DNA of 64,000 nt. It comes from Octopus sinensis. Taxonomy: Eukaryota. Below, piece after piece: positions 5,879-51,200 of this stretch. The stretch's first letter is position 1. Each line of letters opens with the position of its first letter. The DNA lies in NCBI RefSeq assembly GCF_006345805.1, contig NC_043010.1, positions 66,588,001 through 66,652,000 of the forward strand. The letters run 5' to 3'. The translations under genes were made by a program, and so were the position numbers. Below the pieces are notes generated by a model. It was not told where the DNA came from. It saw nothing but the letters and a program-made list of their open reading frames with translations, and searched no databases.

Positions 5879-7108
5879 ACTCATTATTACTATTGTAATC
5901 ATTATTTCTGTCCATTTTCTCATGCTTGCATGGGTTAGACAAGTCTTCTTCAGTACAACATCCTTCCACTTGTTGTTCTCATTTGTCTTCTTCTCCATGA
6001 GGTTCTACCTCTTGAGATCAGCTTTCATAATTTTTTTCCAAGTCTTCCCAAGTCATCTTCCACAATTTTCTTCCATTTGAATCAGTAAGCACTTCTTTAG
6101 CCAACTGCCATCCTCCATACCAGCTCAGTCTTCTCTGTGGTACAGCACCTTCTGATTCATCTTATACTCAATACTGTAAATCCTCAAGTATAGTCTGCCC
6201 TTGAATATAATACGCAGGGGATTTTTAAGGGGCTGTACCTTTGAAAAACCTAAACCTTGTGTATAATGCACACCCCTTCTCTAACTTGAGTCAAGGAGGT
6301 CTATATAACGTCCTTGGTTTGTAAAAATGTATACGGTAACGTCCTTTATTATTATTGTATATATAACATAATGCAAACGTGTAGCTTTTTTGTGCTTTTT
6401 GCTTGCAGAAAATAAAGAAATAACAGTAATAACATTTGATAAATGTTGCTTACTGCAAGTTATGGATGATTCTTTTATGACTTCATTGCTTTCAGGCTTA
6501 GCTTAAATTATTTTCGCGTACGATATTACAAAATGTGTCCGAATAAACATTGCCGGACAGCAAATAGGGACTTGGACATTGCTTAGAAAATATTTTTCAT
6601 TTTTAACCTCGTATACAGTACACACTAGGGATTTTGACCTTTAAATTTTGGGGGAAAATGCGGATTATACTTGAGGATTTATGGTATTTCTCTCACTGTA
6701 ACTGTTCTCCACCATTCACACACATAAACAATTCACATTCAGCGGGACATACCTAACTTGTTTCTTTCTAGCTTTCACACATTCTCCACATTTGGTGTCA
6801 GTGATTCACTACCAATCAGTATCGTTCCTCACACCTAAGTATCACTCAACCTACTCTTCACCCCCAAAAGAAAAAAAACAAACACCCTTGTTGCAAGTAA
6901 GAAGTGAACGCTTCCCAACATTTTCTCATCGCGTAGGAGTGGCTGTGTGGTGTGGTAAGTAACTTGCTTACGAACCACATGATTCTGGGTTCAGTCCCAC
7001 TGCGTGGCACCTTGGGCAAGTGTCTTCTACTATAGCTTAGGGCTGACCAAAGTCTTGTGAGTGGATTTGGTAGACGGAAACTGAAAGAAACCCATCGCAT
7101 ATATGTAT

Positions 7109-7361
7109 CATCATCATCATCATTTAGCGTCCGCTTTCCATGCTAGCATGGGTTGGACGGTTCAACTGGGGTCTGGGAAGCCAGAAGGCTGCATCAGGCC
7201 CAGTCTGATCTGGCAGTGTTTCTACGGCTGGATGCCCTTCCTAATGCCAACCACTCCGTGAGTGTAGTGGATGCTTTTTACGTGCCACCCGCACAGGTGC
7301 CAGATGGGGCTGGCAAATGGCCACGGACGGATGGTGCTTTTTACGTGCCACCGGCATGGGG
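7109..7361 (-). mobile_element. RTE 3' UTR fragment nested in a CORE-like SINE
   Basis: Same repeat as 34363-34670; (CAT)n at the left end; splits the SINE at 6935-7628 inside its microsatellite. Confidence 0.8.
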
Positions 7362-7365
7362 ACCA

Positions 7366-7407
<42 letters not shown>

Positions 7408-8301
7408 ATGTGTGTGTCTGTGTTCGTCCCCCCAACATCGCTTGACAACCGATGCTGGTATGTTTACGTCCCCGTAACTTAGTGGTTCAGCAAATGAGAC
7501 CGATAGAATAAGTACTAGTCGTACACAGAATAAGACCTGGGGTTGATTTGCTCGACTAAAGGCGGTGCTCCAGCATGGCCACAGTCAAATGACTGAAACA
7601 AGTAAAAGAATAAAAGAGAGAGTAAAGAGTATCCCATCCTGTTCCTACTCCGGTTACTATAGTTAGGTGATCACGTTCCTTCACCCTTAATTAAGTCACC
7701 TATTCACTGCATCTATTGTACAGCCACAGTTTACATTTGAACACACTGTATGAATTTCTTCAGTTTCTTATTTGTGGTTTTGTTCCTTATGTTAGGCTGA
7801 CTGTCTGCAGCACATTTTTTATTATACAAGATGCCATCCCAAACATTTCTTATTTCTTATGTCTGTGTGTTCTTAGTTTACAGGTTTACAGTTACCACTC
7901 CTAGGTCATGGTTGAATGATTGGGCTATAGACAAAAAAAGGAAAAAAAAATAAACAGCCGAACTCCTTGCAAGTACCCAGCATTAAAAACATTGCACTGT
8001 ACAAGATGTTAAACTACATTGGGATGGGTGGTAGTGTGTGTGTTTATGTGTCTGATTTTGTTAAACTACTACACACATACACACACATATACTTTCACAC
8101 TTTTGCACATAGAAAGCCTTTAGAAAGAAAAAGGAATCTTATTCAAGTAGCTGGATGCTGTGTTGACAATGTAACAAATGTAATGCAGACGAGGAGATGA
8201 ATAGAAAGGAGTTGGTGAGCATTAGTTGATGCTAACCAGACACTTCCAAACCTTATGTGTGTGTGTATCTGTGTGTGCATGTTTGTGTATATATGTATGA
8301 A

Positions 8302-8332
<31 letters not shown>

Positions 8333-8337
8333 GTAAT

Positions 8338-8715
8338 CATCATCATCATCGTTTAACGTCCGTTTTCCATGCTAGCATAGGTTGGACGGTTCAACTGGGG
8401 TCTGGGAAGCCAGAAGGCTGCACCAGGCTCCAGTCTGATCTGGCAGTGTTTCTACAGCTGGATGCCCTTCCTAACGCCAACCACTCCGTGAGTGTAGTGG
8501 GTGCTTTTTACGTGCCACCTGCACAGGTGCCAGACAAGGCTGGCAAACGGCCACAATCGGATGGTGCTTTTTACGTGCCACCGGCATGGAGGCCAGTCGG
8601 GGCGGCACTGGCAACGGCCTCGTTCGGATGGTTCTCTTACGTGCTACCAGCACTGGTTTCACAGCTACAATTTCCATTGACGTTGATCGATTTCGTTTTT
8701 GATTTTCAACATCAA
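8338..8715 (-). mobile_element. RTE 3' UTR fragment
   Basis: Family match; (CAT)n tail abutting a (TA)n run. Confidence 0.8.
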
Positions 8716-9856
8716 TGGAAAATGTGTAATTTCAGACTTAGCGACTATAGTAGAAAGGATTATTAATTATCAGCAGAAGTTGCATAGTGACTCCAGGGTC
8801 AAACATTTCACGAGTTGTTACTTACCAAACTTGTTTCAAATCACGGGGATTACATTTAGATATCGATCATAATGATAATTGTATGGATTCTTCTAGAAGC
8901 AATCTTCTTAACCACACAGTTATGCCCACTGGGCTTCGTTCTGTTTCCATCTACTAAATCCACTCCCAACACATTGGTCAATCGAGGGCAGTGAGAGATG
9001 GCACCTTGAGTCAGGCAGTAGGACTGAGCCCCTAAACCTAACGGTGTAAAGAGGAATTTTTAACCTCACATCCATACCTGCATCTATTCTTTTACTTGTT
9101 TCAGTCATGTGACTGTGGCCATGCTGGAGCACCACCTTTAGTTGAACAAATCAACCCCCAGTACTTATTCTTTGTAAGCCTAGTACTTATTCTATTGACC
9201 TCTTTTGCTGAACCGCTAAGTTACGGGGACATAAACACACCAACATCAGTTGTCAAGCCATGGCAGGTGACAAACACACACACACACACACACACATATA
9301 TGCGACAGGCTTCTTTCAGGTTCCGTCTACCAAATCCACTCACAAGGCTTTGGTCAGCCCAAGACTATAGTAGAAGACACTTGCCCAAAGTACCATGCAG
9401 TGGGACTGAACCCAGAACCATGTGGTTAGGAAGCAAGCTTCTTTGGTTTGTAAAGAAAAGTCGTTCCCAAAATGTCTGAACATCTCATCTCTCTCATGGC
9501 AAAATAATTTCTTCCAGTTTGAAAATTAATTGTGAAATAGGCCATCACCAATTCCTAACGTTTCACTACAACTTAGAGGTTCAAACCTTACATGTTCCAG
9601 GGTTTGTGTTCTGGGGCAAAAAAATTTATGCTTCAGGTTCATCATCATTATCGTCGTTATCCCATGTTCCATGCCAGCGTGGATTGGACAGCTTGACAAG
9701 ATTGCTTTTAGCTATTTTCCTGAGAGAAACTGGTTCCACTCCTAACTCACTGGTTGAGTAATTACTGGCAGGAAAAAGCATATCCAGCTGTTAAAACAAT
9801 TGTTTTATCTTTGTACATGAATATAAATATTGTAAAGACTATCCCACTTGGGATCA

Positions 9857-10039: not shown

Positions 10040-10510
10040 TGCTGACGTGGCCGATGACAGAATTGCCTCACTGGCACCTGTGCCAGTGACATGTTAAAAA
10101 CACTGAGCATGATCGTTGCCAGGGCTGCTGACTGGATCCCGTGCCAGTGGCACGTAAAATGCATCATTCGAGGGTGATCATAACCAGCATTACCGTACTG
10201 GCACGTGAAAAACAACATCCGAGCGAGGTCGTTGCCAGTGCCACTGGAGTGGCTCCTGTGCAGGTGGCACATAAAAAGACACAATTTGAACGTGGCCGTC
10301 GCCAGTACTGTCTGACTGGCCCATGTGCCGGTGGCATGTAAAAGCACCCACTACACTCTCGGAGTGGTTGGCGTTAGGAAGGGCATTCAGCTGTAGAAAC
10401 TCATCCAGATCAAGACTGGAGCCAGGTGCAGCCATTTGGTGCACCAGTCCTCAGTCAAACTGTCCAATCCATGCCAGCATGGAAAGCAGACTTTAAACGA
10501 TGATGAGGAT
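10040..10510 (+). mobile_element. RTE 3' UTR fragment with several internal gtggcacgtaaaaagcacc repeats
   Basis: Family match; ends in gatgatgag then (TA)n. Confidence 0.75.
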
Positions 10511-10663
10511 GAATATTATATGTATATATATATGTATGCGTATATATGTATATACGTATATGTATATATATGCATATATGTATATATATATATAGAAAAA
10601 AACTCAGAAAAAGGCTACATCCCTTTTTTTCTGTAGAGAAAAAGGCTACATCCCTTTTAATAG

Positions 10664-10718
<55 letters not shown>

Positions 10719-11330
10719 ATATATATATGTATGTACATATATACAACAGGCTTCTTTCAGTTTCCGCCTACCAAATCCACTCACAAGGCTTTGGTAGGCT
10801 GCCGGCTATCGTAGAAAACACTTGCCTAAGGTGCCACACAGTGGGACTGAACCCGGAGCCATGTGGTTCGTTAGCAAGCTTCTTACCACACAGCCACTCC
10901 TAATATATATGGGATCTTCATGGCAACCATGAGGAATGTATACTAAGAGCAATACAAGCCATTCATTTGTAGCAGTCAATTATATATAAAATTTTATGTC
11001 CGTAACTGGTGCCTGTGCTGGTGGCACGTAAGAAGCACCCACTACACTCTTGGAGCAGTTGGCGTTAGGAAGGGCATCCAGCCATAGAAACCATGCCAAA
11101 TCAGATTAGAACCTGGCGTAGCTCTGCAGCGTCCCAGTTTTCAGTCATACTATCCAACCCATACCAGCATGAAAAGCAGACGTTAAATGATGATGATGAT
11201 GATGATGTATACCCTGTTATCAAAAGGGGAGATAATCTCATGAATCAAGAATTCTCCTAAGCTAACAAACCATTAAGGCAAAAGAGGAAAGGCTTATTAT
11301 GTGTCTGTCTCTCTCTGTCTCCGGCTCTCG

Positions 11331-21782: not shown

Positions 21783-23819
21783 CTAGCAAAAACTGTCCGA
21801 TGAACGGCAACGCGAAACTCAGAGTAACAGGTTTTGTTGAATTTTCTGCTGCTTTAAATAAAGTATATGTATATATATATATATATAATGGGCTTCTTTC
21901 AGTTTCCGTCAACCAAATCCACCCACATATGCCTTAGTCGGCCTGAGGCAATCGTAGAAGACACTTGCCCAAGGTGCCACGCAGTGGGGCTGAACCTGGA
22001 ACCATGCAGTTGGGAAGCAAGCTTCTTACCACACAGCTGCGGCTTTATAGATTTTTTTTTTTTTTTTTGTAAAACAGTAGTGTGGGTTTGAGGCTTGGCT
22101 ACTATTTCTAGCAGGTTAAGTGAGCACAAAGTGCCTCAATAAGTATTTTCAATGTAGGTCAAGTGTAGAGTAAGGAATTTGTTGTTTGTTTGTGTGTATG
22201 TCAAGGATCCAGATGAGTAATGCAGTGTTTCTATACTTAATGATAGCAAAGTGGTGGTGATGGTGGTAGCAGCGGCATGTGTGTGTGTGGTTATCATTGC
22301 AGGGTAGGAGTGGCTTCATGTTAAGACATGCATAAGTACTATTTCAATGTCGAGTGTATATGTGTGTATATATCTATCTATCTATCTTATCTATCCATCT
22401 CATCTGTCTGCTTGGCGTGTCTGTCTATCTGTACCAGTTCTGTGCGTATTTTTCTTACTGTTTTTCTGTAAATTCCATTGTTATTCGCTTGTGCCACAGC
22501 TGTGTGGTAAAGAAGCTTGCTTCCCACCCAACCGTATGGTTCCAGGTTCAGCCCCACTTCGTGGCAACCTTGGGCAAGTGTCTTCTACTATTGCCTCAGG
22601 CCGACTAAGGCTGATGTGGGTGGATTTGGTAGACTGAAACATGGACACAAAGACACTCACATAAATATTATATATATATATATAATGGGCTTCTTTCAGT
22701 TTCCGTCTACCAGATCCACTCACAAGGCTTTGGTTGGCTCGAGGCTAGAGTAGAAGACACTTGCCCAAGGTGCCACGCAGTAGGACTGAACCTGGAACCA
22801 TGTGGTTGGTAAGCAAGCTACTTACCACACAGCCACTCCTGCGCCTATATAGTCAATACCCAAGTTGAATATATCTTTGAAATATATTCAATTTCAAAGA
22901 TAATTGAATATATAGGTAGTATAATTTATTTGAAATACAGTTATGAAAGGTTCATCCCTTTCGTTGCCATTGTTACCTTGGCGCACACTGCTGCCTTTGA
23001 TTTAATTAACTTTGAAAATAATGAAAAAAATTTTTAATAAATTAGTCATTACTAAGTAGATATTTCGAACATAAATTAACATGGAATTTTCATCATCGTC
23101 AACATTTAACATCTGCTTTCCATGTTGGCATGGATTGGGCAGTTTGACAGGAGCTGGCAAGGCCAGGGGCCACACTAGGTCCCGTAGTCTGTTTTGGTTT
23201 CTTTTCTACAGCCACATACCCTTCCTAACCTCAACCACTCTACAGTGTACTGGGTGCTTTTTAAGTGGCACCATCACCAGTGCTTTTTATGTGGCACCAG
23301 CACCCATGCCAATACTTTTTACATGGCATTTTTTTGATAAAAGATTTTAATTTAGATCAATTTAAGACAAGAAGTTTGTGTCTAAGAACCAGAGTTAGTC
23401 TCAGAGTCTCAGGCAAGTTCATATCAAAAGGATTAACAAGCTAAATATACAATCTTCTTTATATCTTACTTAGCATGGATATTCTGTAGAAAGACACAAA
23501 ACTGCAGTGTTCCTCTCGAGACGACATCTTGTGTAAATGTACAGTACTAAAAGGCAAATTTCTGGATTTAACAATTCCACTTTTGTCTGCTACTGATATT
23601 CTCCTATGCTTCTTGAGCACAATGTATCTATGCGAGATGTTTTCTCGAGACGAATACCACAGCTTTATGGCTTTCTACGGTATATCCACATTAAGTAAAT
23701 TATACAGAATGGTATTTTGAAATAATGCTGCTTCCATTGCTAATAACAACTAAAATCTTCTTTGTCGTTTGTCATGGCGTTTATGGCTAATGTTATAAAT
23801 TTGATTTTCTCTATTTTAG

Positions 23820-24210
23820 GTCAAGTACCGTGTATTGAATGAGGAAGGATGAGCTGCTGCCTGTGAATCTATCCAACCCCAATTTTGAAACCTGTTGAGG
23901 ATGGAAAACAAACATATCATGGAACATGTATATAATAACTACTCATTAACTTTAAATATCCTGTTCAGAAACATAATTTGGAAATATTAATTTACATCAA
24001 TTCCAGTTATTATACAGTCTTGTATATCTCGAACTTATCCCTCAGAAACCCCTCCAGATTGCCTGAAATATAATTCTTGAGATTGGTGAAGAAAGGAAAA
24101 AAAGCACAACAAAATTTTTTTATTTTTTTTTATATCATTTACATACAGTTCTTGTTATCACTCTTTTAAAAATTTTACAAATATTGAGTGAAATATATTG
24201 TCTCTTATGA
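23820..24210 (+). other. 5' UTR part of the ZNF coding exon
   Basis: Polypyrimidine tract plus AG at 23818-23819; no obvious intron between it and the ATG. Confidence 0.5.
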
Positions 24211-26464
24211 ATGACTGTTTTAAATTGGAAAATGATGGAGAATGAAGCAAAGATTGTGTTTAGTGATGTTATTAGTGAGCAGGTTCTGAACAAAGACGAT
24301 CCATCTGAAGAAAATGAGGCTGAAGAGCAACCTCTACCACGTGACTTTGTTCTGAGAAAAGAGAATCTGTCTGAGAGAAATGAAACTAAAGAGAGACCCT
24401 TCCCCTATGACTTTGCTCAGAACACAGGTAACCCATCTGAGGGCAATAAGACTGGAGAAAAACCTCTGCCTTATGGCTTTATTCCAAACAGAAATTACTC
24501 ATCTGAGGGAAATGAGGTTGAAGAAAAGCCTCTCTCCTATGACCTTGTCTTAAGCAGAAGTAATCCGGCTGAGGGAAATGAGGTGGTTGAGGAAAAACCT
24601 CTCACTTATGGTTTTGTTTCAAACACGAAAAATTCATCGGAAGGAAATGAAACTGAGGGGCAACGTTCCCCACATGACTTTGTTCTCTACACGGATAACT
24701 CACCTGCAGGGAATGAGTCAGAAGAGCAACCTGGTCCTCATGACTTCGTTCTGAATGAAGACGATTCATCTGAGGTGAATGAGACTAAAGAAGAGCCTCT
24801 CGCCTCTGGTTTTGTTCCAAACACAAATACTTCAACTGAAGGGATTGATACCGAAGATAATCCATCTGGGATTAAGTCATCATCTGAGGGGAGTCTGACT
24901 GAAGAAAAAGCTTTTCCTTATGGTTTTGTTCTAAACACAGGTAACTCGTACGGGGTCAAGTCATCTGAGCGGAGTGTGGCTGAAGAAAAATCTCTCCCTT
25001 ACAGCTTTGTCCTGAATACAGGAAACCCATCTGGAGTTAAATCATCTGAGGGGAACCTGACTGGAGAAAGATCTCTCCCTTACAGCTTTGTTCTAAACAC
25101 AGGTAACTCATCTGGAGTCAAGTCATCTGAAGGGGATATGAGTGAAATGCGATCTCTCCCTTACAGCTTTGTTCTAAATGCAGATAACCCATCTGGGGTT
25201 AAGTCATCTGAGGGGAGTGTGACTGAAGAAAGGTCTCTGCCCTACGGCTTTGTTCTGTACACGGGTCACTCATCCATGGGAAACGAGTCTAACATGGCAC
25301 CTCTTCCCTATAGCTTTGTTCTGAACACAGACATTTCATCTGAGGGGAACGAGACCAAAGAGGGGACACTTACCTGTGACCCTTCAACTGGAGTGAATAA
25401 AATCGAAGGGAAACCTCTCCTATGTGACTTTGTTATGAACACGGCTAACCCGTCTGAAGAGAATGAGATGGACGAGAAACTTTTCCTTTGCGACTTCTGT
25501 GGCGAATCCTTCGACGTTTACATCAACCTTTCTGCGCACAAGCAGTTACACACAGGTGGTAGACCATTCCATTGCGAAATTTGTGATAAGAACTTTTCTA
25601 CTTATGAAAGCCTCTCTAGGCATATACGGATACATACAGGTATAAGGCCGTATGTTTGCGAGATTTGCAGCAAAACCTTTTCTGAAAGTAGTCACCTTTA
25701 TAAGCACCATCTCGTACACACAGGTGAGAAACCTTACCATTGTGAAATTTGTGGTAAAGCATTTTCTCAAAGCGGCACCTTGTGTCGCCATCGGCTGATT
25801 CATACAGGTGAGAAACCGTATCGCTGTGAAACTTGCGGTAAATCATTCTCTCGGAACAGTCATTTGTCAACCCACAGATGGATACATACGGGAGATAAAC
25901 CATTTTATTGTGAAACGTGTGGGAAATCTTTCTCGACAAACTCGGCATTGTTGGCCCACAAAAGAACTCACACGGGAGAAAAGCCCTTCCGTTGCGAAAC
26001 ATGCGACAAAACTTTTTCAACTAATTTTGCATTATCGTTGCATATACGGGTTCACACGGGCGAGAGGCCGTATCACTGCGAAATTTGCGACAAATCATTT
26101 TCCACAAACTCTACATTATCTTCTCATCGTCGGACACACACCGGGGAAAAGCCATACCATTGCGAGACGTGCGGTAAATCTTTCTCGACGAGCTTCGCAT
26201 TGTCTTTGCACCGTCGAGTTCACACGGGGGAAAGACCTTACCGTTGTGACCTCTGTTCTAAAACATTCTCCACCAATTCTACCTTGTCTTCACATAAACG
26301 AACGCACACAGGTGAAAAACCTTTCCACTGCGACATCTGTGGTCATTCCTTTGGTCAGAAATACACGTTATCCGTTCACAAACAAATCCACAACAGAGAA
26401 AACAACAACAGTAATAGCAATAACAATAATGATAATAATAATAGTAATAATAATAATAACAATA

Positions 26465-26499
<35 letters not shown>

Positions 26500-26577
26500 A
26501 GTAATGATAATAATAATGATAATAATACTAATAATAATAATAATAATTTCTGTCAAATTGTACAAACAAATGAATAA
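24211..26577 (+). CDS. C2H2 zinc-finger protein, 788 aa: N-terminal tandem acidic repeats, 11 C2H2 fingers (25489-26391), C-terminal poly-Asn
   Basis: Uninterrupted ORF; 11 CxxC-x12-HxxxH units joined by TGEKP/TGERP-type linkers; (AAT)n tail 26392-26548. The start could instead be the ATG at 24232 or 24235. Confidence 0.96.
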
Positions 26578-26832
26578 ACCACGGGAATATCATTTATATG
26601 GACAGGGAGGCATTTCAGTGAATCACTTCATAAATTCCAAAATACTTACACAGAAAGGTTTGTGTAAGTATGTGTATATGATATACACTCACACAGACAA
26701 AGTAAAAAAACCCCAAAAAATAACAAAAAACAAAATCAAAATGGTACGAGTTTTAATTGTCATTAATCTTTGTATTTATTTCATCAAAGATTCACAAGCT
26801 ACACAATGGTATGTATGTGTATGTATATATAC

Positions 26833-26865
<33 letters not shown>

Positions 26866-26866
<1 letters not shown>

Positions 26867-27169
26867 CATCATCATCATCGTTTAACGTCCGTTCTCCATG
26901 CTAGCATGGGTTAGACGGTTCAACTGGGGTCTGGGAAGCGAGAAGGCTGCATCAGGCCCAGTTTGATCTGGCAGTGTTTCTACGGCTGGATGCCCTTCCT
27001 AACACCAACCACTCCGTGAGTGTAGTGGGTGCTTTTTACGTGCCAGACGGGGCTGGCAAACGACCACGGACGGATGGTGTTTTTTACGTGCCACCGGCAC
27101 GGAGGCCAGGCCAGGCCAGGCCAGGCCAGGCTGGCACAGCCATGATCGGATGGTGTTTGTTACATGCCA

Positions 27170-27172
<3 letters not shown>
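26866..27172 (-). mobile_element. RTE 3' UTR fragment inserted in (TA)n downstream of the ZNF stop
   Basis: Family match; (TA)n on both sides. Confidence 0.8.
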
Positions 27173-27214
<42 letters not shown>

Positions 27215-29109: not shown

Positions 29110-29525
29110 TTCAGCAAGCGAAGTAATTGCTGTGGCCAATACCAGTACTGCCTGACTAGCACCCATGTCGGTGGGACAAAAAGCGCCATTCGGGCGTGGT
29201 TGTTGCCAGTGCTGCTTGACTGGCTCCTGTGCTGGTAGCATGTGAAAAGCACTATTCGAGCGTGGTCATTGCCAGTGTTGTTTGACTGGCTCCTGTGCAG
29301 TGGCATGTAAAAAGCACCTTTCAAGTGCGGTCAATGACAGTACTGCCTGACTGGCCCTCATGTTGGTGGCATGTAAAATGCACCCACTACACTCTCAGAG
29401 TGATTGGCATTAGGAAGGGCGTTCAACTGTAGAAACATTGCCAGATCAGACTGGAGCCTGGTGCAGCCTTCTGGCTTGCCAGCATGGAAAGTGGATGTTA
29501 AACAACGACGATGATGATGATGATG
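29110..29525 (+). mobile_element. RTE 3' UTR fragment, older
   Basis: Family match with internal repeats and a (GAT)n tail. Confidence 0.7.
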
Positions 29526-34362: not shown

Positions 34363-34910
34363 TCATCATCATCATCATTTAATGTTCGTTTTGGACGGTT
34401 TGACCGGGGTCTGGGAAGCCAGGAGGCTGCACTGGGCTCCAGTCTGATCTGGCAGTGTTTGTACAGTTGGATGCCCTTCCTAACGCCAACCACTCCGTGA
34501 GTATAGTGGGTACTCGGTTGATGCTTTTTACGTGCCACCGGCATTGAAGCCAGCCAAGGCGGCGCTGGCATCGGCCACATTCGGATGGTGCTTTTTATGT
34601 GCCACTGGCACGGGTATCACAACTACAATTTCTATTTAGTTTTTATTTTGATGTTGATGTACTTAACTCAATAGGTCTCCTCAAGCACAGCAGGTCACCC
34701 TATGATCCAAGGTAAGCACAGCAGGCCGTCCTGCGATCCAAGGAACTTTGGATGGGCTGGGGCTGCTATGTGAAGCTGGTGTGGGAAGAAACAACCACAA
34801 ACTCACATTATTTGTTGGGTCTTTGCAGTCACAGCATATCTCTAGAGGTCTCGGTCTTTCGTCATTGCCTCTGTGAGGCCCAACGTTCAAAGGTCATGCT
34901 TGACCACCTC
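34363..34910 (-). mobile_element. RTE-clade LINE 3' end (ORF C-terminus plus 3' UTR, (GAT)n tail)
   Basis: 34910 to 34803 translates EVVKHDL*TLGLTEAMTKDRDL*RYAVTAKT, a typical RTE C-terminus. It is continuous with the common ...gttaggaagggcatccagctgtag...gttaaacgatgatgatg repeat. Confidence 0.75.
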
Positions 34911-40017: not shown

Positions 40018-43000
40018 GTGTAATTTTCTGTGAAATCTGGTTTAAAAGCTAGCTAGTAATTTAAAAATAGCAACTGTAACCAACTGTTTTTAGTGACTAC
40101 ATAGGAATTTTTAAAAAATGTTTACTGCCGGATACAGTTGTGTTTCTCGTTAAATAAAATAGTTGATGCTATTTTTGTTTAGTTTTCATTGAAAAAGCTA
40201 AATATGCTTTTAAATATTTTTTTATGGGTTTACAGCGGCAGTATATATATATATATATATTTCAAACGAAATAATATCGGGTTTTCTATAACACAAGGTG
40301 ACGACATTTACTTCAGCACGAACCAGCAGCAGACGCCAAGCGCGAACCCTTTTGTCTTCATTCCACCAATGGAGTCTTTATGCGGTCACTCAACTTACTA
40401 GAAGTAGCAGCTAAATCTCTATAAAAATGACATCTTTTGTCACACTATTCTGATTTTTTACTCAAAGGTGGAGAGCTAGTGGAATTGCTAGCAAGTCGGA
40501 CAAAATGTTTAGCGGCATTTCTCTAGGTATACGTTCGAAGTTCAAATTCCGCCAAAGTCGACTTTAACTTTTCATCGTTTTGGGGTCGATAAAATAAGTA
40601 TAAGTCAAGTACTGGAGTCGATGTACCCGACGTGCCTCTTCCCTCGAAATTACTGTGTGCAGCTTTCGTCACCAACACGTTTTCCTTTCTGTTCGTCTCT
40701 GAGCGCCCGGAGAACAAATTTTGCACACGTTCAGATCTTCATTAATAGTTCAGTGTACAGTTGCCACACCAACTCCAAAATGCATGTTTGTCATCTTTGT
40801 ATTGGATCATCCCATAAATAATTCGTTTTTTTTTCAATTGCATGCTCTAAAAGTTGGAGGTGGGTGGGACAAACTCCTTGCATCAACATGCTATAATGGG
40901 TTCTCCATAAAAATGTCAAGCGCTGAAGACTGTGGGTACAGAAAGGAGAAACACTGGCATCCCAGGCTAAAGAAGGTCTTCACCCACGTAAGGTGTTGTT
41001 ATCTGTTTGGTGAGATATGAAAGGTTTTATCTACTTTGGACTTTTAAACCCAAGCCAAACGATAACAAAGGAGATCTGCTATAAGCAGCTTGAGTCAGCG
41101 CAAGAAGAAAAACAACCATCTTTGCTTTCAAGACGAAAAGTGTTCTTCCATCAGGATAATGCTCAGACACATACAGCAAGGATGACATTCTAAAGGCTGG
41201 AGCAGTTTGAATGGGAAACGATGCCCCACTCACCATATTTGCTGGACATTGTCCCATCTGATTATCATTTATTCTACAGTCTTCAAAATCATTTAGACAG
41301 AAAAAATAGGAATTCTATAGATGAGGTCAGAACTGTACTGGAGGAGTATTTTTTGTGACAGACAAATGAATTTTGGAAGAGGGGCCTTGCAAGTCTTCCA
41401 GATAGATGGGAGAGCATTGTAGAAAATAAAGGAGAGTATATTTTAGATTAAAAGAGAACTTTATCCCAATGTGGTCGATGCCAGAGCTGCCTGACTGGCT
41501 CCCGTACCAGTGGCACATAAAAAGCATCCACCACACTCTCGGAGTGGTTGGCATTAGGAAGGGCATCCAGCTGTAGAAACCTCGCCAGATCAGATTGGGG
41601 TCTGGTGCAGCCTACTGGCTTGCCAGTCCTCAGTCAAACCGTCCAACCCATGCCAGCATGGAAAACGGACGTTAAACAATGGTGATGATGATGAAGAGAA
41701 GTATAAAAAAAAACCGTATTATGATCTGACCCAATAGATATACAATGGTCTTTATTCAGAAAATTGTGAATTTTCTCAACCACCTCTGATGTTCTAATTC
41801 CTCTCTCACCCCCACATCTCTCATGGTCTCTCACCTCTACCTTCCTTGAACCTTTTGTGTCAGTGCAAAGCAGCTTCTTGGCTCATACAAGTTTATCCTT
41901 AGTCTGAAGCATTTCATAAGTTTATGTAGCATTTTTACCCAGTTTAACCCTTTAGTGTTCAAATTTCTCTATTAAATGTAATACTTTTTCACTCAAATTG
42001 TTTTGAATTAATCATGCATTACCTTATAGCTTTGTGGTTTCAATGATGTGATTGTTTATTTTTAGAATGTCAATGTAGGTTAGGTGTGAGAGGCTAGATG
42101 TGGCCAGTTTGAATATAAAATATGTAGAATATATTGGGTCGGATTTGGCCAGTTTAAACACTAAAGGATTAACACAAAACTTTACTGCATAGTGGGCTTC
42201 CAAGATGTCTTCACGTCCTGATTGCACTCTTGAAACTAGTCAGGTGTGACAAACAGAGCACAGTAAGGTGTGTTCAAAGAGCTGTTACTACTGTTTTATC
42301 TTCAATCTCAAATAACAAATGTTGACAGGTCAGCTTGTCTGGTGTATAGTAATGACACAGTATAATCTAAATAATGTAGGGCAGTTTATAACTACCTCCC
42401 CTAAAAGCGAGTCTCAAGGTTTCAGGTAGGCATCTCATATGTATTATATATGTAATAATTAAACTGTATGAAGTTTGGTGAAAAAATCTTTTAAAATTAA
42501 ATCCTGCTTGAGACCCGCCTAAAAAGCTACACCTGTATGGACTCTCACTCTATCTCTCTCTCTCCTCCTCTCTCTCTCCTCCTCCTCTCTCTCTCCTCCT
42601 CATCTCTCTCCCTACTTTGGTTTTGAACAAAAAGCTTTCTCATCAGACCACTCCTTCTGTAAGGACTTCTCTGTATTGACTTACTGCTATTCCTGTGAAA
42701 ATGATTGCTGTCTATTCCTTCTTACTCGCCCTCATACAATCGTCCCCAAGCAACCTAAATGCCCCACCCTTAACCCTAACCGTCTCATTATATATTTCTT
42801 TACTACCCACAAGGGGTTAAACACAGAGGACGAACAGGGACAGACAAACGGATTAAGTCGATTACATCGACCCCAGTGCGTAACTGGTACTTAATTTATC
42901 GACCCCGAAAGGATGAAAGGCAAAGTCGACCTTGGCAGAATTTGAACCCAGAACGTAATGGCAGATGAAATACCTATTTCTTTACTACCCACAAGGGGCT

Positions 43001-45291: not shown

Positions 45292-48200
45292 ATGATTTCA
45301 GATATTTGTCTTAAACATTCAGACAAGCAAATTTATAATTCCGATGTATGACATGAGTTATTATTCCATTCAGATAACCACATATTTATATTAAGAGTCA
45401 GATGTTAAAAATATAGAAATATATAAGGGGTACCATGAAAGTAGAAAATATATTAAAGGAGGCAAGTGAAATATATTTAATATATTTTCTACTTTCATAG
45501 TACCCCTTATATATTCTTGGGTTTTTTATTTTTTATGTTTTTATTCTTATATTTCTATATTCGTAACATCTGACTCATAATATAAATATGTGGTTATTTG
45601 AATTGAATAATGCCTCATGTCATACATCTGAATTATGAATTTACTTGTCTGAATGTTTAAGACATTATGTGAAATTTTTATCGTACACCATTAAGAAGGG
45701 CACCCTGCCGTAGAAGCCATACCAAAGCAGACTACATCTTGGTGCCACTCTCTGGCTTACCAATTCCAGTCAAACTGTCTAGCCCATGCCAGCATGGAAA
45801 GCAGATGCTAAATGATGACATATATATATAGGCACAGGAGTGGCTGTGTGGTAAGAAGCTTGTTTCCCAACCACATGGTTCTGGGCTCAGTCCTACTGTG
45901 AGGCACCTTGGGGGCAAATGTGACTGAAAGAAAAAAAATATCAGAGTTGGTTTGTTTGACTAAAACCCTTGAAGGTGGTGCCTTTTATAACTGCACCCCC
46001 CCACACACACACACCAAAAAAAAAACTGAGATTGCTTGCAGGGTGACAGGTGTGGAATGTTAGTGGGAAACTATTTTGGCTTTTGCTAATGGAAACTTTC
46101 ATGGGATATTTTTGAAATTTGTAAAAGCTGTGTTGAAGATAAATTGAAATATGGTGATTATACCCTTATCAGTGGTCTTGTGGGTTTACTCTTTTACTTG
46201 TTTAAGTCATTTGACTGTGGCCATGCTGAAGCACCGCCTTTAGTCGAGCACATTGACCCCAGGACTTATTCTTTGCTGGACCGCTAAGTTACGGGGACGT
46301 AAACACGCCAACATCGGTTGTCAAGCGGTGTTGTGGGGACAAACACACACACACACATATATGTATATATATATATTGTGCGCGAGAAGACCCGGCAGGA
46401 CAATTGAGGCCATAACCCATGGCCCTACCTGGGACATAGTCAGTCCACCTGTGCATACCTTCCTTCTTGGGACACATAACTGACAGGTTGTTATCATCTG
46501 TATAGGACTGGACATTATTGGAATTGGTGACAAAGGGGTTGTTGAAGCAGAGGAAGAAGGGAGTGAAAGACAAAACTGAACTTGAAGTCATACCATTCAT
46601 TCTTTCTAGAAATCGAGTAGAGATGATTCATTTATCACTGTGGTCTTCTATTTGGAGCAAAACCTCCCTGAAAATTGAGAATCTATGTGTTTGTGTACCA
46701 GGTGCAAGTGAAAGTTTTAATGCCGTCAGAGCCAACAACTGCGTTTTCACCAAATTCTTGTGGAGGAGTGATCATCGGGGAGTGGCATTGGAGAGTAGGC
46801 CTCCAGTAGGTCTGGCTTTACAAAAACCATGCTGATTGACATTAATGAAATCCAGGAACTTGTCTGGCCATTTTTCATATCTCGTTGTAAACATATGAGT
46901 TAGAATTACAATGGATGCAGCTGAGAGACCATTTCCTGTTTTCAAGATCCAGTGGAAACGCGTGCAATTTGGGAGTTAAAGTAATCATTTTGAAGTAGTT
47001 GCACGTTCAGCTGGCTGTGAGTAAGCGAATTCAGTTGTTTCTGTGTTTTTACTTTGCAGGCATGATTGTCTGGCACCTGTGTCGGTGGCACATAAAAAGC
47101 ACCCACTACACTCATGGAGTGGTTGGCATTAGGAAGGGCATCCAGCTGTAGAAACACTGCCAGATCAGATTGGAGCCTGGTGCAGCCATCTGGCTTCCCA
47201 GACCCCAGTTGAACCGTCCAACCCATGCTAGCATGAAAAACGGACGTTAGGAAGGGCATCCAGCTGTAGAAACACTGCCAGATCTGACTGGCCTGGTGCA
47301 GCCTTCGGGCTTCCCAGACCCCAGTTGAACCGTCCAACCCATGCTAGCATGGAAAGCGGACGTTAAACGATGATGATGATGATATATACATACATACAAC
47401 GGGCTTCTTTCAGTTTTCGTCTACCAAATCCACTCACAAGGCTTTGGTTGGCCTGTGGCTATAGTAGAAGACACTTGCCCAAGGTACCACGCAGTGGAAC
47501 TGAACCTGGAACCATGTGGTTCGTAAGCAAGCTACTTAAAACAGGTAGAATATTTGGGCTGGATGTGTCTGGTTTAACTGCTAAAGTTTTAAAACAATAC
47601 TGGTAGGTCATTTGTAGCCCTTGACCTTTCTAATATGTGACATTCTCTCTTGTTTTGAGAGGAACCCGTTAATTTTGAAATGAATCCTCCTTTTCATATT
47701 TTCATGCAGGAAACTTTTCATTAAATTATGTTCCAGACAATATAACAAAGAAATTCCCTCCAATTTTTTTTTTTGTAATTATTATTTTCAAAATTTATTT
47801 CAAATTTCAAACATTTTTTTCATGAGGTTAGAATATAATTTTTATCTTTCTTTTTATTATGGCAAAGTTTGATTTGACTGCTGCAACTCTGTTGAGTGTG
47901 TGTGTGTTTGTGTATTCATAAATACAGGGAATGTATTTTTTTTTTTTTTGCTTGTTTTCCACTTTCAGTCACGAATCAATCTTGAAGTATTTTCGAGTTT
48001 GCCGTGATCCGTGTGAGAGATTTTATTGTCTTACATTTTGAAATAAGTTTCAGTGAGTTATTGTGGTAATACCATTAACTTTTCTAATGACATTATAATA
48101 ATACTACTAGTGCTGTTGCTGCTGCTACTACTACTACTACTAATAATAATAATAATAATTATGTTCAGTAATAATTTCATCTGTAAATAATACTGGTAAA

Positions 48201-51200
48201 GATAATTCCAAAATCCATCGACTATGCACTGCTTGTATTATAATGATGGCTAACATAACCACCTGTTGTCTAGTTTTTTTTCTATAATTAATGATTTCTA
48301 ACATTAATTAAAATTCCTAGAATTGTCTACCCTATCTTTCCTGAGTTAGTTGTTAAAGATAGATGAATTATTAATCCGGTCTTCTGACTAATTTCAGCTA
48401 AAATTTCTTGGTTCACTATTTTCTTTTCTACTCTTCTACTCTAGGCACAAGGCCCAAAATTTGGGCGGGGGGAGTCAATTAGTATGCAATTGGTACTTAA
48501 TTTATCAACCCTGAAAGGATGAAAGGCAAAGTCAACCTCGGTGGAATTTGAACTCAGAACGTAACTTTACTCCCCACAAGGGGCTACACACAGAGGGGAC
48601 AAACAAGGACAGACAAACGGATTAAGTCGATTGCATCGACCCCAGTGCGTAACTGGTACTTAATTTATCAACCCTGAAAGGATGAAAGGCAAAGTCAACC
48701 TCGGTGGAATTTGAACTCAGAACGTAACTTTACTCCCCACAAGGGGCTACACACAGAGGGGACAAACAAGGACAGACAAACGGATTAAGTCGATTGCATC
48801 GACCCCAGTGCGTAACTGGTACTTAATTTATCGACCCCGAAAGGATGAAAGGCAAAGTCAACCTCGGTGGAATTTGAACTCAGAACGTAACTTTACTCCC
48901 CACAAGGGGCTACACACAGAGGGGAAAACAAGGACAGACAACGGATTAAGTCGATTGCATCGACCCCAGTGCGTAACTGGTACTAATTTATCGACCCCGA
49001 AAGGATGAAAGGCAAAGTCAACCTCGGTGGAATTTGAACTCAGAACGTAACTTTACTCCCCACAAGGGGCTACACACAGAGGGGACAAACAAGGACAGAC
49101 AAACGGATTAAGTCGATTGCATCGACCCCAGTGCGTAACTGGTACTTAATTTATCGACCCCGGAAGGATGAAAGGCAAAGTCAACCTCGGTGGAATTTGA
49201 ACTCAGAACATAAAGACAGATGAAATACCGCTAAGCATTTCACCTGGTTTGCTAACATTTCTGCCAGCTCACTATCTATGGCTTAGTGGTTAGGGGTATT
49301 CAGCTCTCAATTGTAAAGTTGTGAGTTTGATTCCTAGCAGCTCACTGTGTCCTTGAGCAGGGTGCTTTATTTCTCATGTTGCTCCTGTCCACTCAGCTGG
49401 CAAAAATGAGTAGTACCTGTATTTTCAATATTGTCAATTTCCCCAAACGGGGACACAATTCAATTTTTTAAACAATAACCAAAGGGGGAGGGTTACGGTT
49501 TACAATTATTTAACAAATGCAACACAACAACGCTTCCTTTACGAGGAACCAACAAACGTGATAACAATAGTTAAACAGAAATAATAATAAAAACAAACCT
49601 TACGGTAAACCAAAAAGCAGTACTCTGTTGAAGCTATAGGCCTTTATGGATCAGAAATAAACTAAAAGCGGTACTCAGTAGAATGCTTAATGCTAGCTAA
49701 TTAGCAAATAATCTAATGTAAAAACCGTGCACACCTCCATCTGGACTATTCCATTTCTGCACACTAATTTTATTTTTTATTTATTCCCATTCATGTGAAA
49801 CCACTGATTCAAGTTCAAGTCATTGATGCAATTTTATACCAATTGCTATATTTTTACTTTTGTTATGTTACGATAATATTATACTTTAGTTTGATTTTAA
49901 TTATTACTTACTACATATAATTCAATTGTTATTATTATTTTTATTGTTAAAGGGAAAGTATCTGACATAAAATAGAGAAATGTTTTTGTTTCACTTTTAA
50001 CACGTAATACTGAAATAGTGGAGAAGATATGATATTGCTATGGGCTCGCTCTAGGCAAGAAGTTGAACTTTTTTTTTTGTCCATGAAACTACATGGACCC
50101 TAAGTAAGGCGTGTGTAAAATTTGAATGAAATTGGTTGTGTAGTTCTCAAGTTTTAGGGAATCGTAGTGGAGAAGATATGATATTGCTATGGGCTCGCTC
50201 TAGGCAAGAAGTTGAACTTTTTTTTTGCCCATGAAACTACATGGACCCTAAGTAAGGCGTGTGTAAAATTTGAATGAAATTGGTTGTGTAGTTCTCAAGT
50301 TTTAGGGAATCGTAGTGGAGAAGATATGATATTGCTGTGGGCTCGCCTTAGGCAAAAAGTTGAAAATTCTTTTTGCCGATGACATTCCCCGGACCCTAAG
50401 TAAGGCATGTGTAAAATTTGAATGAAATTGGTTGTGTAGTTCTCAAGTTTTAGGGAAACACACACACAGACAGACACACACACATTCTCAGTTTTATATA
50501 TATAAAGATTAATTAACTTTTCTTAAGCTTTTCTTATTCATAATGGTACTCAAATGCTATTTTACTTCTGCTGTTTGACATCGTTTACCAATTCCTTGTT
50601 TGGTTTCTCATTAGTTTTATGTTTATTTTCTTTGTTTCAAGATGCCTTTAGCTGAGGTTGTAAACATAGTCAGTCCCTAAAATACCTAGTGTTAATAATT
50701 CTTGACGTTTCAAAGACTACATTCTTACAAGAGAGAAAACAACAATACATAGAGAGGTTGGACAAACTCTAAGAATTTGTTCATGATTAATACACCATAA
50801 TTGCATGTAAGCAGTTTTAATACCTGGTGGTTGTTGCTGAATTTGTGACATTTGAATAACTTATATAGGTAAGAAAATAAACGTTTTTTTTCACCTCAGA
50901 CATGCTCTTTGCCTTTAATTTTAAAAAATACCAATAATTCATGTTCTGTGTTTAAATAATTAGGATAATTAATTATAACCTGTTGTTATCATCATCATTG
51001 TTTAACGTCCATTTTCCATGCTGGCATGGGTTGGACGGTTCAACTGGGGTCTGGGAAGCCAGGAGGCTACACCAGGCCCCAATCTGATCAGGTAGTGTTT
51101 CTACAACTGGATGCCCTTCCTAGCGCTAACCACTCCGAGAGTGTAGTGGGTGCTTTTTATGTGCCACTGGCACAAGGGGCCAGAGGAGCTGGCATCGACC

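What the first reader, a model, noticed from the sequence alone, without database searches (positions are those of the whole stretch)
24280..25490. Novel 22/27-aa tandem repeat domain in register with, and apparently derived from, the entry of zinc finger 1
Seen: 16 units start at 24325, 24391, 24457, 24523, 24592, 24658, 24724, 24790, 24904, 24985, 25066, 25147, 25228, 25294, 25360 and 25408. Most are 66 nt, with a block of four 81-nt units carrying a GVKSS insert. The consensus is EKPLPY(D/G/S)FVLNTxNxSEGNExx. The register runs straight into finger 1 (GKPLLCDFV.. then EKLFLCDFC..), and one junction spells a full TGEKP linker. Inference: a linker plus first-Cys segment of a C2H2 finger lost its Zn ligands and was amplified into a ~390-aa acidic effector region. 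Octopus ZNFs have no KRAB domain, so this may be a lineage-specific alternative effector module. Many units carry YxxV/I after acidic residues (LIR/YxxPhi-like), which could give a multivalent docking array.
Basis: partly seen in the sequence, partly recalled or inferred. Interest (0 to 1): 0.7.

Follow-up and report, generated by a model that had tools for sequence, protein, structure and literature searches.

The report
Orphan repeat arm on octopus zinc-finger protein
An Octopus sinensis gene for an 11-finger DNA-binding protein has a real, translated N-terminal arm of about 16 copies of a 22/27-residue unit with no known relatives, whose first residues weakly resemble a zinc-finger linker; it is a tidy curiosity of one gene, not a demonstrated new effector family.

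Summary
ORF 24211-26577 (+, 788 aa; Octopus sinensis chromosome CM016872.1) encodes a short leader, a tandem array of 66/69/81-nt units at the stated coordinates, 11 C2H2 fingers and a poly-Asn tail.

Profiles built from one subset of units recover the others and nothing else in the window. Only the 48-nt 'unit 15' is undetectable. An extra partial unit lies at 24283-24323.

The array behaves as coding sequence:
- It is open only in this frame.
- Every length difference between units is a multiple of 3.
- pN/pS is 0.49 in frame against 0.89 and 0.99 in the shifted frames.
- Neutral drift would give about 9 stops; there are none.
- Units are as diverged as the fingers (53-81% DNA identity), so the array is old.

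Derivation from a finger linker and entry is plausible but weakly supported. The register is exact, yet the similarity covers only about 8-10 residues (T-x-E-K-P-x-x-C/Y; hhalign P about 0.01). Only unit 16 is specifically like finger 1 (P 0.002).

No homologue turned up in Pfam, PDB or 1.84 billion representative proteins, so there is no evidence of a family-wide effector module. The LIR-like claim is weak, and no tile passes a published acidic activation-domain rule. Function and transcription remain untested.

The parts
24211..26577 (+). Single open reading frame of 788 aa (stop codon included): leader, repeat array, 11 C2H2 fingers, poly-Asn tail.
   Evidence: An in-frame TGA at 24208 lies directly upstream. 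The identical product is called in GCA_006345805.1, CM016872.1, at 66,612,211-66,614,577. Locus L001 equals window 14211-36577.
24211..24282 (+). Non-repeat leader (MTVLNWKMMENEAKIVFSDVISEQ).
   Evidence: No profile hit upstream of 24283.
24283..24324 (+). Partial 'unit 0', tail only (VLNKDDPSEENEAE).
   Evidence: nhmmer with the units 1-7 profile, model positions 25-65, E 4.4e-8.
24325..24789 (+). Units 1-7 (66 nt each; unit 4 is 69 nt), the 22/23-aa type. Units 6-8 are the most acidic part.
24790..24903 (+). Unit 8 (66 nt) plus a headless 48-nt copy of the 81-nt type (DNPSGIKSSSEGSLTE).
   Evidence: TRF starts the period-81 array at 24880. The 81-nt profile hits 24796-24903 at E 2e-11.
24904..25227 (+). 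Units 9-12, 81 nt (27 aa) each, with a 15-nt GVKSS insert. This is the youngest block: units 10-12 are 78-81% identical and unit 9 is 69-74% identical to them. It is nearly charge-neutral.
25228..25359 (+). Units 13-14 (66 nt each).
25360..25407 (+). Degenerate 48-nt remnant ('unit 15', EGTLTCDPSTGVNKIE). It keeps a Cys at the position of the first finger Cys.
   Evidence: Not detected by either profile.
25408..25473 (+). Unit 16 (GKPLLCDFVMNTANPSEENEMD), the unit most like the head of finger 1.
   Evidence: Profile E 1.8e-13. Local DNA alignment to the finger-1 head matches 20 of 25 positions with one 1-nt gap, shuffle P 0.002.
25474..25500 (+). Head of finger 1 (EKLFLCDFC), exactly one period after the start of unit 16. 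This is the proposed 3' end of the amplified segment.
25474..26397 (+). Eleven C2H2 zinc fingers of 84 nt each.
   Evidence: Pfam zf-C2H2 with 11 stretches (E 5e-54) and zf-H2C2_2 (E 5e-81). Regex scan. Alignment A3 has invariant C6, C9, F13, L19, H22 and H26.
26398..26574 (+). C-terminal tail; the last 57 residues are 68% Asn, encoded in frame by the (AAT)n microsatellite at 26419-26547.
24110..24149 (+). Polypyrimidine tract ending in CAG, a possible 3' splice site that would open the coding exon. Inferred, not tested.
   Evidence: Direct reading of the sequence.

Best explanation
The region is a translated, selectively maintained tandem-repeat arm. It has about 16 usable units of 22 or 27 residues and spans roughly 380 aa at the N-terminus of an 11-finger C2H2 protein of Octopus sinensis.

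Origin (inferred, about 0.6). A 66-nt segment was amplified in tandem. It comprised the polar spacer just upstream of finger 1 plus the linker-like entry of that finger (E-K-x-aromatic/aliphatic-x-Cys-Asp-Phe-Cys). In the copies the two Cys positions became Tyr and Val, so the units cannot bind zinc. A later 15-nt insertion (GVKSS) created the 81-nt subtype, which was amplified again.

Mechanism (inferred, about 0.35). The arm is a flexible, polar, mostly acidic chain. It presents up to 15 copies of a short hydrophobic, beta-prone motif (L-P-Y-x-F-V-L-N) spaced by S/E/G/N-rich segments. Tethered to DNA by the fingers, it would bind a partner protein multivalently, by avidity. Whether the outcome is activation, repression or something else is unknown.

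Shown: the array, its frame, its constraint, its age, its register with finger 1 and its lack of detectable relatives. Inferred: the origin, the disorder and the docking function.
For: Coding and constrained:
- Frame 0 has no stop in 421 codons, while the other five frames have 15-61.
- All unit-length differences (66, 69, 81, 114, 48) are multiples of 3.
- Pooled pN/pS among 15 aligned units is 0.49, against 0.89 and 0.99 in the two shifted frames.
- A neutral simulation with the observed divergence expects 8.9 stops in the 15 units, with P(0) about 1e-4.
- GC is 43.7% in the array and 44.0% in the fingers, against 38.0% in the window.

Old array: units are 53-81% identical in DNA, similar to the fingers at 44-73%.

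Conserved positions lie in both halves of the unit: F8 in 14/15, V9 and E17 in 13/15; E1, L4, P5, N11, S16, G18 and N19 in 11/15.

Finger origin:
- The period continues exactly into finger 1.
- Cys is retained in units 15 and 16.
- Unit 16 against the finger-1 head gives P 0.002.
- The register scan ranks the predicted register 11 of 5,544, all better ones being on the same diagonal (mean identity 0.44-0.48 against 0.25 +/- 0.05). The signal persists without unit 16 and finger 1.
- hhalign gives P 0.01 and 0.007 in the predicted register.
- A finger DNA profile hits the heads of units 2 and 16 in register (E 0.12 each).

Composition: E, S, N, G, P and T make up 57%; GRAVY is -0.86, net charge -43 and pI 4.3.

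No known domain or structure matches.
Against: - No orthologue or paralogue was found, so constraint is inferred only from within-gene copies, which are not independent.
- A pN/pS of 0.49 is only moderate constraint.
- The finger similarity is short and is largely explained by T-x-E-K-P. hhalign probability is 4-5%, and the nhmmer hits are not individually significant.
- For the average unit the match is no better to finger 1 than to fingers 4, 10 and 11.
- Disorder is argued from composition only. The charge-hydropathy plot also puts the fingers on the 'disordered' side.
- The single-sequence AlphaFold model is uninformative: pLDDT is about 30 everywhere, including two fingers.
- No partner or motif class is identified.
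- No tile meets the acidic activation-domain rule.
- Transcription and translation were not observed directly.
Confidence: 0.5

Rival explanations
1. The array is a tolerated coding minisatellite. It expanded by replication slippage or unequal crossing-over inside a disordered N-terminus and persists because in-frame polar repeats do little harm. It has no specific partner or function.
For: There are no relatives anywhere. Constraint is only moderate (pN/pS 0.49). The same gene carries an in-frame (AAT)n poly-Asn tail, so it tolerates repeat expansion. No known motif class is convincingly matched.
Against: The units are old (up to 47% DNA divergence), yet there are no stops or frameshifts (P about 1e-4 under neutrality). 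Substitutions are biased to synonymous sites only in the coding frame. The F-V core and the S-E-G-N tail are kept in nearly all units.
Confidence: 0.3
2. The resemblance to the zinc-finger linker and entry is coincidental or convergent. The unit arose from unrelated spacer sequence, and E-K-P plus an aromatic residue is a chance match.
For: The similarity is limited to 8-10 columns, with hhalign probability 4-5%. Finger-profile hits have E 0.12 even in a 1.26-kb search space. Matches at E-K-P codons alone can account for about 0.46 mean identity in a 27-nt window (arithmetic). The 13-residue tail shows background identity to the fingers.
Against: The best register among 5,544 is the predicted one. 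The period runs exactly into finger 1. The two units next to finger 1 retain Cys and the C-D-F string. Unit 16 against finger 1 gives P 0.002, about 0.02 after correcting for 11 fingers.
Confidence: 0.35
3. The arm is an acidic transcriptional activation domain of the 'acidic exposure' type, in which aromatic and Leu residues are kept exposed by surrounding acidic residues to bind coactivators.
For: Net charge is -43 and pI 4.3. Each unit has Y, F, L and V next to Glu-rich spacers. Ser/Thr are abundant, about 8 per 39-aa tile, so phosphorylation could raise the acidity, as described for p53 AD1 in PMC10550315.
Against: No 39-aa tile satisfies the published rule: charge <= -9, W+F+Y+L >= 7, plus the diagonal term (rule, applied). 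The acidic tiles have only 2-5 W/F/Y/L, and the hydrophobic tiles have charge 0 to -6. The means are -3.8 and 5.8. The 81-nt block is about neutral.
Confidence: 0.15
4. The acidic arm acts within the molecule. It folds back on the basic finger array and tunes DNA binding by autoinhibition or faster target search, as described for other acidic disordered tails next to DNA-binding domains.
For: The charges are opposite: N-terminal region -43, finger region +15. Acidic patches that modulate the transcription-factor search are mentioned in PMC10550315.
Against: There is no direct evidence. The conserved hydrophobic F-V-L core is not needed for a purely electrostatic role. The block nearest the fingers is the least acidic.
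Confidence: 0.12
5. The array is not part of the protein. Translation starts at a downstream Met (for example M420, MDEKLFLC), or the region is UTR or intron.
For: The exact 788-aa product, and every shorter Met-start version, is absent from the 15-billion-protein collection. No transcript evidence was available.
Against: The region shows frame-specific openness, indels in multiples of 3, frame-specific pN/pS and coding-like GC. The gene is called as 788 aa on the assembly.
Confidence: 0.06
6. The units fold into a regular beta-rich repeat domain (a solenoid or hairpin stack) rather than a disordered chain.
For: Conservation is spread over the whole unit, not only over a short motif. The AlphaFold model places short strands on Y-x-F-V-L-N in nine units.
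Against: pLDDT is about 30 throughout, the model used no alignment, and the composition is 57% E/S/N/G/P/T. There is no PDB or Pfam relative. Unit lengths vary (22, 23, 27, 16).
Confidence: 0.1

Closest known systems
FAR (finger-associated repeats), an N-terminal repeat class of C2H2 zinc-finger proteins. It is listed with FAX, POZ and KRAB in PMC4288486. That it comes from Xenopus is from my memory (Klocke et al. 1994).
   Same: The architecture is the same: a block of non-finger tandem repeats directly N-terminal to a multi-finger C2H2 array.
   Different: There is no detectable sequence relationship. An exhaustive phmmer search of 1.84 billion representative proteins returned only two coral proteins. 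The octopus unit is 22/27 aa, and its head resembles a finger linker. I could not inspect FAR sequences directly.
[quoted passage not shown]
   Same: Both are lineage-restricted, Glu-rich N-terminal sequences attached to a poly-finger array and lacking similarity to known domains.
   Different: FiNZ is a single 28-aa sequence shared by about 700 zebrafish genes and has knock-down evidence for transposon repression. The octopus array is a 16-copy repeat found so far in one gene, with no functional data.
Degenerate or non-functional zinc fingers inside or beside finger arrays of KRAB-ZNF genes (PMC2865497).
   Same: Finger-derived sequence has lost its zinc ligands but remains in the reading frame next to functional fingers.
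   Different: Those are whole 28-aa fingers with one or two ligands lost. Here at most a linker plus the first roughly 9 residues is finger-like. The unit is 22 aa and has been amplified about 16 times, with its own conserved motif.
KRAB, SCAN, BTB/POZ and ZAD effector domains of C2H2 proteins.
   Same: They sit N-terminal to the fingers and presumably serve a non-DNA-binding role.
   Different: There is no Pfam match. KRAB and SCAN are vertebrate-specific (PMC2443715). Those are folded, single-copy domains, not repeats.
Porites lobata CD20-like membrane protein CAH3123308.1 (P0001), with 27-aa repeats in its C-terminal tail.
   Same: The period is 27 aa and the shared pattern is E-x-x-x-L-P-Y-S-[FY]-x-x-x-T-G-N...S...T-E. 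phmmer gives E 9e-7. The score is far above a unit-column permutation null (143 against 35 +/- 11).
   Different: The protein context differs: a four-pass CD20/MS4A-type membrane protein from a cnidarian. In octopus the 27-aa period is secondary, a 22-aa unit plus the GVKSS insert, and the insert region does not match. Repeats also multiply one unit-level chance match. Most likely this is convergence or chance.

Membership tests
C2H2 zinc finger (applied to the repeat unit) | Two Cys and two His zinc ligands with the spacing C-x2-4-C-x12-H-x3-5-H. | tested here: not met
   Units have Tyr (10/15), or His, Arg or Ser, at the first-Cys position and Val (13/15) at the second, and they lack a His pair. 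Only units 15 and 16 keep one Cys. The Pfam zf families match only residues 420 onward. A profile of the gene's own fingers scores -0.2 bits on the N-terminal 421 aa.
C2H2 zinc finger (applied to the repeat unit) | The TGEKP-type linker followed by an aromatic-x-Cys entry. | tested here: inconclusive
   In-register similarity of T-x-E-K-P-L-P-Y to TGEKP-x-x-C gives hhalign P 0.007-0.01 with probability 4-5%. The register scan ranks it 11 of 5,544. A literal TGEKP occurs once.
C2H2 poly-zinc-finger protein (applied to the whole gene) | A tandem array of canonical fingers joined by H/C links. | tested here: met
   There are 11 fingers, with zf-C2H2 E 5e-54 and zf-H2C2_2 E 5e-81.
KRAB / SCAN / BTB / ZAD effector domains | A significant match to the corresponding Pfam model in the N-terminal region. 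| tested here: not met
   hmmscan of the 421-aa N-terminal region against Pfam-A gives only NLE at E 0.12, below its cut-off.
FAR (finger-associated repeats) | Tandem non-finger repeats directly N-terminal to the finger cluster. | tested here: met
   The array at 24283-25473 abuts finger 1 at 25474.
FAR (finger-associated repeats) | Sequence similarity to the Xenopus FAR repeat units. | tested here: inconclusive
   No amphibian protein appears among the hits of the exhaustive search. I could not confirm that FAR proteins are in that library, nor compare with them directly.
FiNZ | Similarity to the 28-aa cyprinid N-terminal sequence, and sharing by many paralogous ZNF genes. | tested here: not met
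   No fish hits were found. No second gene with the repeat occurs in the window or in the protein libraries.
LIR (Atg8-family interacting) motif | The core [W/F/Y]-x-x-[L/I/V]. | tested here: met
   There are 9 Y-x-x-[VI] cores within units. A 4-residue pattern with two fixed classes is expected often by chance.
LIR (Atg8-family interacting) motif | Acidic or phosphorylatable residues immediately N-terminal to the aromatic residue (positions -1 to -3). | tested here: not met
   None of the cores has D or E within 3 residues upstream. Positions -3 to -1 are P/S-L-P.
Acidic activation domain (acidic exposure model) | 39-aa tiles with charge <= -9, W+F+Y+L >= 7 and the diagonal term of equation 1 in PMC10550315. 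| tested here: not met
   No tile of the 788-aa protein passes. N-terminal tiles have mean charge -3.8 and mean W+F+Y+L 5.8. The authors state that the rule finds only one subclass of such domains.
Acidic activation domain (acidic exposure model) | Activates a reporter when tethered to DNA. | not testable with these tools
   This needs a GAL4-DBD or tiling reporter assay.

The most novel reading that the evidence does not exclude
A fragment of a DNA-binding module (the finger linker plus first beta-strand) lost its zinc ligands and was amplified and exapted into a new multivalent effector array. That array would be shared by a set of octopod ZNF genes that current protein catalogues do not model, making it a cephalopod counterpart of KRAB or FiNZ born from the finger itself.
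Probability: 0.1. Interest if true: 0.6.

Novelty: new member of a known kind. Interest (0 to 1): 0.3.

Why it matters
Cephalopods have about 1,800 C2H2 genes, and nobody knows what their non-finger parts do (PMC12513265, PMC10547256). A constrained N-terminal array with no relatives is a candidate handle for asking how one of these proteins acts once it is bound to DNA. If its finger-linker origin holds, it would also show a small, clean case of a DNA-binding-domain fragment recycled into a different kind of module. On present evidence it concerns one gene, its function is unknown and it is not a family-wide module, so its importance is modest.

Tried and rejected
1. Homologue searches. The word-index search with the 421-aa N-terminal region gave 8,000 candidates and none significant. 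The full-length query returned only finger-driven hits covering less than 50% of the query. A query spanning unit 15 to finger 3 found O. bimaculoides 'ZNF708' (224 aa) as the best octopus hit, matching fingers only, so it is not an orthologue. None of the other short hits has the repeat.

2. Exhaustive phmmer against 1.84 billion representatives gave two coral proteins. I judged them convergent or chance matches (plus the argument about the secondary 27-aa period).

3. Exact look-ups. The 788-aa product and 8 shorter Met-start versions are absent from the 15-billion-protein collection. The only contig carrying the gene is the O. sinensis chromosome. Absence of relatives is therefore limited by how well octopus proteomes are represented.

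4. A metagenome scan with a degenerate head pattern gave 8 single chance matches and no array.

5. Single-sequence AlphaFold gave pLDDT of about 30 everywhere, fingers included, so it is uninformative. Two attempts to build a pseudo-alignment from internal repeats failed because MAFFT aligned the overlapping rows on identity. The second structure job was not used.

6. A whole-unit 'degenerate finger' origin was rejected. DNA and protein finger profiles and hhalign match only the first 8-10 residues, and the tail is at background identity.

7. PDB sequence search gave nothing. There are no tRNA genes in the window.

8. The Albertin 2015 genome paper is not held in the library.

9. Other short-motif readings noticed by eye or regex are too cheap to count as evidence and were not pursued. 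These are the ITIM-like L-x-Y-x-x-V in 8 units, and TRAF6-like P-x-E-x-x-E and SPOP-like I-K-S-S-S.
Full report
WHERE AND WHAT. The window is a stretch of Octopus sinensis chromosome CM016872.1 (assembly GCA_006345805.1; the species name for this accession is from my memory). The 788-aa product of ORF 24211-26577 is called there at 66,612,211-66,614,577, and the fetched locus is identical to window 14211-36577. It is the only zinc-finger gene, and the only credible long ORF, in the 64 kb. The protein has four parts: a 24-residue leader, a repeat array up to residue 421, eleven canonical C2H2 fingers (Pfam zf-C2H2 E 5e-54, zf-H2C2_2 E 5e-81), and a 57-residue tail that is 68% Asn and is encoded by an in-frame (AAT)n microsatellite.

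The consensus is EKPLPY(D/G/S)FVLNTxNSSEGNETE. TRF detects only two sub-blocks because the units are 53-81% identical in DNA.

Cross-validated profiles settle the matter. A profile of the four 81-nt units finds units 1-8, 13, 14 and 16. A profile of units 1-7 finds units 8-14 and 16, plus a previously unlisted tail-only unit at 24283-24323 (E 4e-8). Nothing else in 128 kb of searched sequence scores below E = 0.8.

Three corrections apply. 'Unit 15' is a degenerate 48-nt remnant that neither profile detects. The 114-nt 'unit 8' is a 66-nt unit plus a headless copy of the 81-nt type. The four-unit GVKSS block is really 4.9 copies.

IT IS CODING AND CONSTRAINED.
- The array is open only in the frame shared with the fingers; the other five frames carry 15-61 stops.
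- All length differences between units are multiples of three.
- Pooled pN/pS among 15 aligned units is 0.49. The same calculation in the two shifted frames gives 0.89 and 0.99.
- If the consensus unit is mutated at random to the observed divergence, 8.9 stops are expected across the 15 units, and zero stops occur in about 1 of 10,000 trials.
- GC content matches that of the finger region (43.7% against 44.0%, with 38.0% for the window).
- The units are about as diverged as the fingers are from each other (44-73%). The array is therefore old, apart from the younger block of units 10-12, which are 78-81% identical to one another.

An in-frame TGA sits immediately before the ATG at 24211, and a polypyrimidine tract ending in CAG lies at about 24110-24149. 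The coding sequence is thus probably one exon preceded by a 5'UTR intron, though this is inferred. Transcription itself could not be tested.

RELATION TO THE FINGERS. The register claim is exact. One period after unit 16 (25408) is 25474, the Glu codon of EKLFLCDFC. Units 15 and 16 keep Cys where the other units have Tyr.

The statistical support for homology is modest but points one way from several directions:
- hhalign of the unit profile against the finger profile aligns columns 1-8 with 1-8 (P 0.01, probability 4%).
- With both profiles rotated, the match lengthens to T-x-E-K-P-L-P-Y-x-F against T-G-E-K-P-x-x-C-E-x (P 0.007).
- A finger DNA profile hits only the heads of units 2 and 16, in register, at E 0.12 each.
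- In a scan of all 66 x 84 offset pairs, the predicted register ranks 11th of 5,544, and the ten better pairs are its neighbours on the same diagonal. Mean identity is 0.44-0.48 against 0.25 +/- 0.05. This holds when unit 16 and finger 1 are left out.
- Unit 16 aligns to the finger-1 head at 20 of 25 nt with one 1-nt gap (shuffle P 0.002). That is better than to any other finger, and the alignment stops right after the second Cys codon.

There are caveats. The general signal is little more than T-x-E-K-P. The average unit matches fingers 4, 10 and 11 as well as it matches finger 1. The 13-residue tail of the unit shows nothing finger-like.

My reading is that a 66-nt segment, consisting of the pre-finger spacer plus the first nine codons of finger 1, was duplicated in tandem, and the copies lost the Cys ligands. 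I put this at about 0.6.

NO RELATIVES.
- Pfam gives nothing for the N-terminal 421 aa, and PDB sequences give nothing.
- The word-index search of 5.8 billion clusters gives nothing.
- Exhaustive phmmer over 1.84 billion representatives gives two coral proteins only.

The better coral hit is a Porites CD20-like membrane protein whose tail has 27-aa repeats with L-P-Y-S-[FY]...T-G-N. The match beats a unit-column permutation null. However, repeats multiply a single unit-level coincidence. The octopus 27-aa period is also secondary (22 aa plus GVKSS), and the insert does not align. I therefore treat this as convergence or chance.

One caveat limits the negative result. The gene's own product is not in the protein collection under any Met start. 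Octopus coverage is thus incomplete, and absence of paralogues is not proven. O. bimaculoides proteins are present.

FUNCTION. The arm is polar and acidic overall (net -43, pI 4.3, GRAVY -0.86). Acidity is concentrated in units 6-8, and the 81-nt block is nearly neutral.

Conserved positions lie in both the hydrophobic head (F8, V9, L4, P5, Y6, L10) and the polar tail (S16, E17, G18, N19).

The single-sequence AlphaFold model has pLDDT of about 30 everywhere, including two fingers, so it says nothing either way. It does place short strands on Y-x-F-V-L-N.

The LIR-like reading fails the flanking-acidic criterion. No 39-aa tile passes the published acidic activation-domain rule from PMC10550315.

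I therefore commit only to this: a flexible, multivalent arm that presents up to 15 copies of a short hydrophobic motif to an unknown partner at sites bound by the fingers. The sign of the regulatory effect is unknown, and I put this reading at about 0.35. The rivals are a tolerated, functionless coding minisatellite (0.3), an intramolecular acidic modulator of the basic finger array (0.12), a weak or phospho-dependent activation domain (0.15), a folded beta-repeat (0.1), and a region that is not translated (0.06).

COMPARISON WITH WHAT IS KNOWN. In architecture this is a 'finger-associated repeat' arrangement, a class named alongside FAX, POZ and KRAB (PMC4288486). In its evolutionary role it resembles lineage-specific N-terminal additions such as FiNZ (PMC10547256). 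Its finger-like head recalls the degenerate fingers known in KRAB-ZNF genes (PMC2865497).

It is not a sequence member of any of these families. KRAB and SCAN are vertebrate-specific in any case (PMC2443715). The recent survey of cephalopod C2H2 expansions does not discuss N-terminal regions (PMC12513265).

VERDICT. This is a new member of a known kind: a lineage-restricted, non-finger N-terminal repeat on a poly-zinc-finger protein. The hint about its origin is interesting, but function is undemonstrated and there is no evidence that it is a family-wide module. Interest is 0.3.

Noticed in passing
window 26398-26574 (microsatellite 26419-26547): The protein ends in a 57-residue tail that is 68% Asn, encoded in frame by an (AAT)n microsatellite. 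It is likely to vary in length and has a prion-like composition.
   Followed up: partly
window 26573-26578: An AATAAA polyadenylation-type hexamer overlaps the TAA stop codon (26575-26577), which suggests a very short 3'UTR if it is used.
   Followed up: no
window 24110-24211: A long T-rich tract ends in CAG at about 24149, which looks like a 3' splice site. An out-of-frame ATG at 24207 opens a 12-codon uORF overlapping the main ATG at 24211. An in-frame TGA sits at 24208.
   Followed up: partly
window 7107-7365, 8336-8596, 10332-10512, 11022-11203, 23090-23270, 26865-27175, 29367-29482, 34363-34613, 41511-41692, 47086-47383, 50988-51297, 56580-56837, 62026-62262: A SINE-like interspersed element (starting CATCATCATCGTTTAACGTCCG...) occurs in about 20 copies or fragments on both strands at 71-93% identity, often flanked by (TA)n or (CAT)n. 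The 169-aa and 175-aa ORFs at 8257-8766 and 51026-51553 are translations of it, not genes. ARAGORN finds no tRNA in the window.
   Followed up: partly
window 63201-63805: Overlapping ORFs of 184 aa and 166 aa on opposite strands (KKERKKEG... and its complement) come from a purine-rich simple repeat. They are almost certainly not genes.
   Followed up: no
window 25474-26397: Within the finger array, fingers 7 and 9 (73%), 6 and 9 (70%) and 7 and 8 (67%) are the most similar in DNA. TRF reports a period-84 array at 25969-26173. This indicates internal finger duplications in the C-terminal half.
   Followed up: partly
P0001 (Porites lobata CAH3123308.1), residues about 222-358: A coral CD20/MS4A-like four-pass membrane protein carries five 27-aa tail repeats (EDVHLPYSYSARTGNVPPSAASVSGVT). 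The first copy reads PPPY. The repeats resemble the octopus 27-aa units more than a column-permutation null allows.
   Followed up: partly
window 24904-25227: The 15-nt GVKSS insert that defines the 81-nt units contains a second copy of the TCATCT that precedes GAGGG in the 66-nt units. It therefore looks like a local microduplication followed by re-amplification of the longer unit.
   Followed up: no
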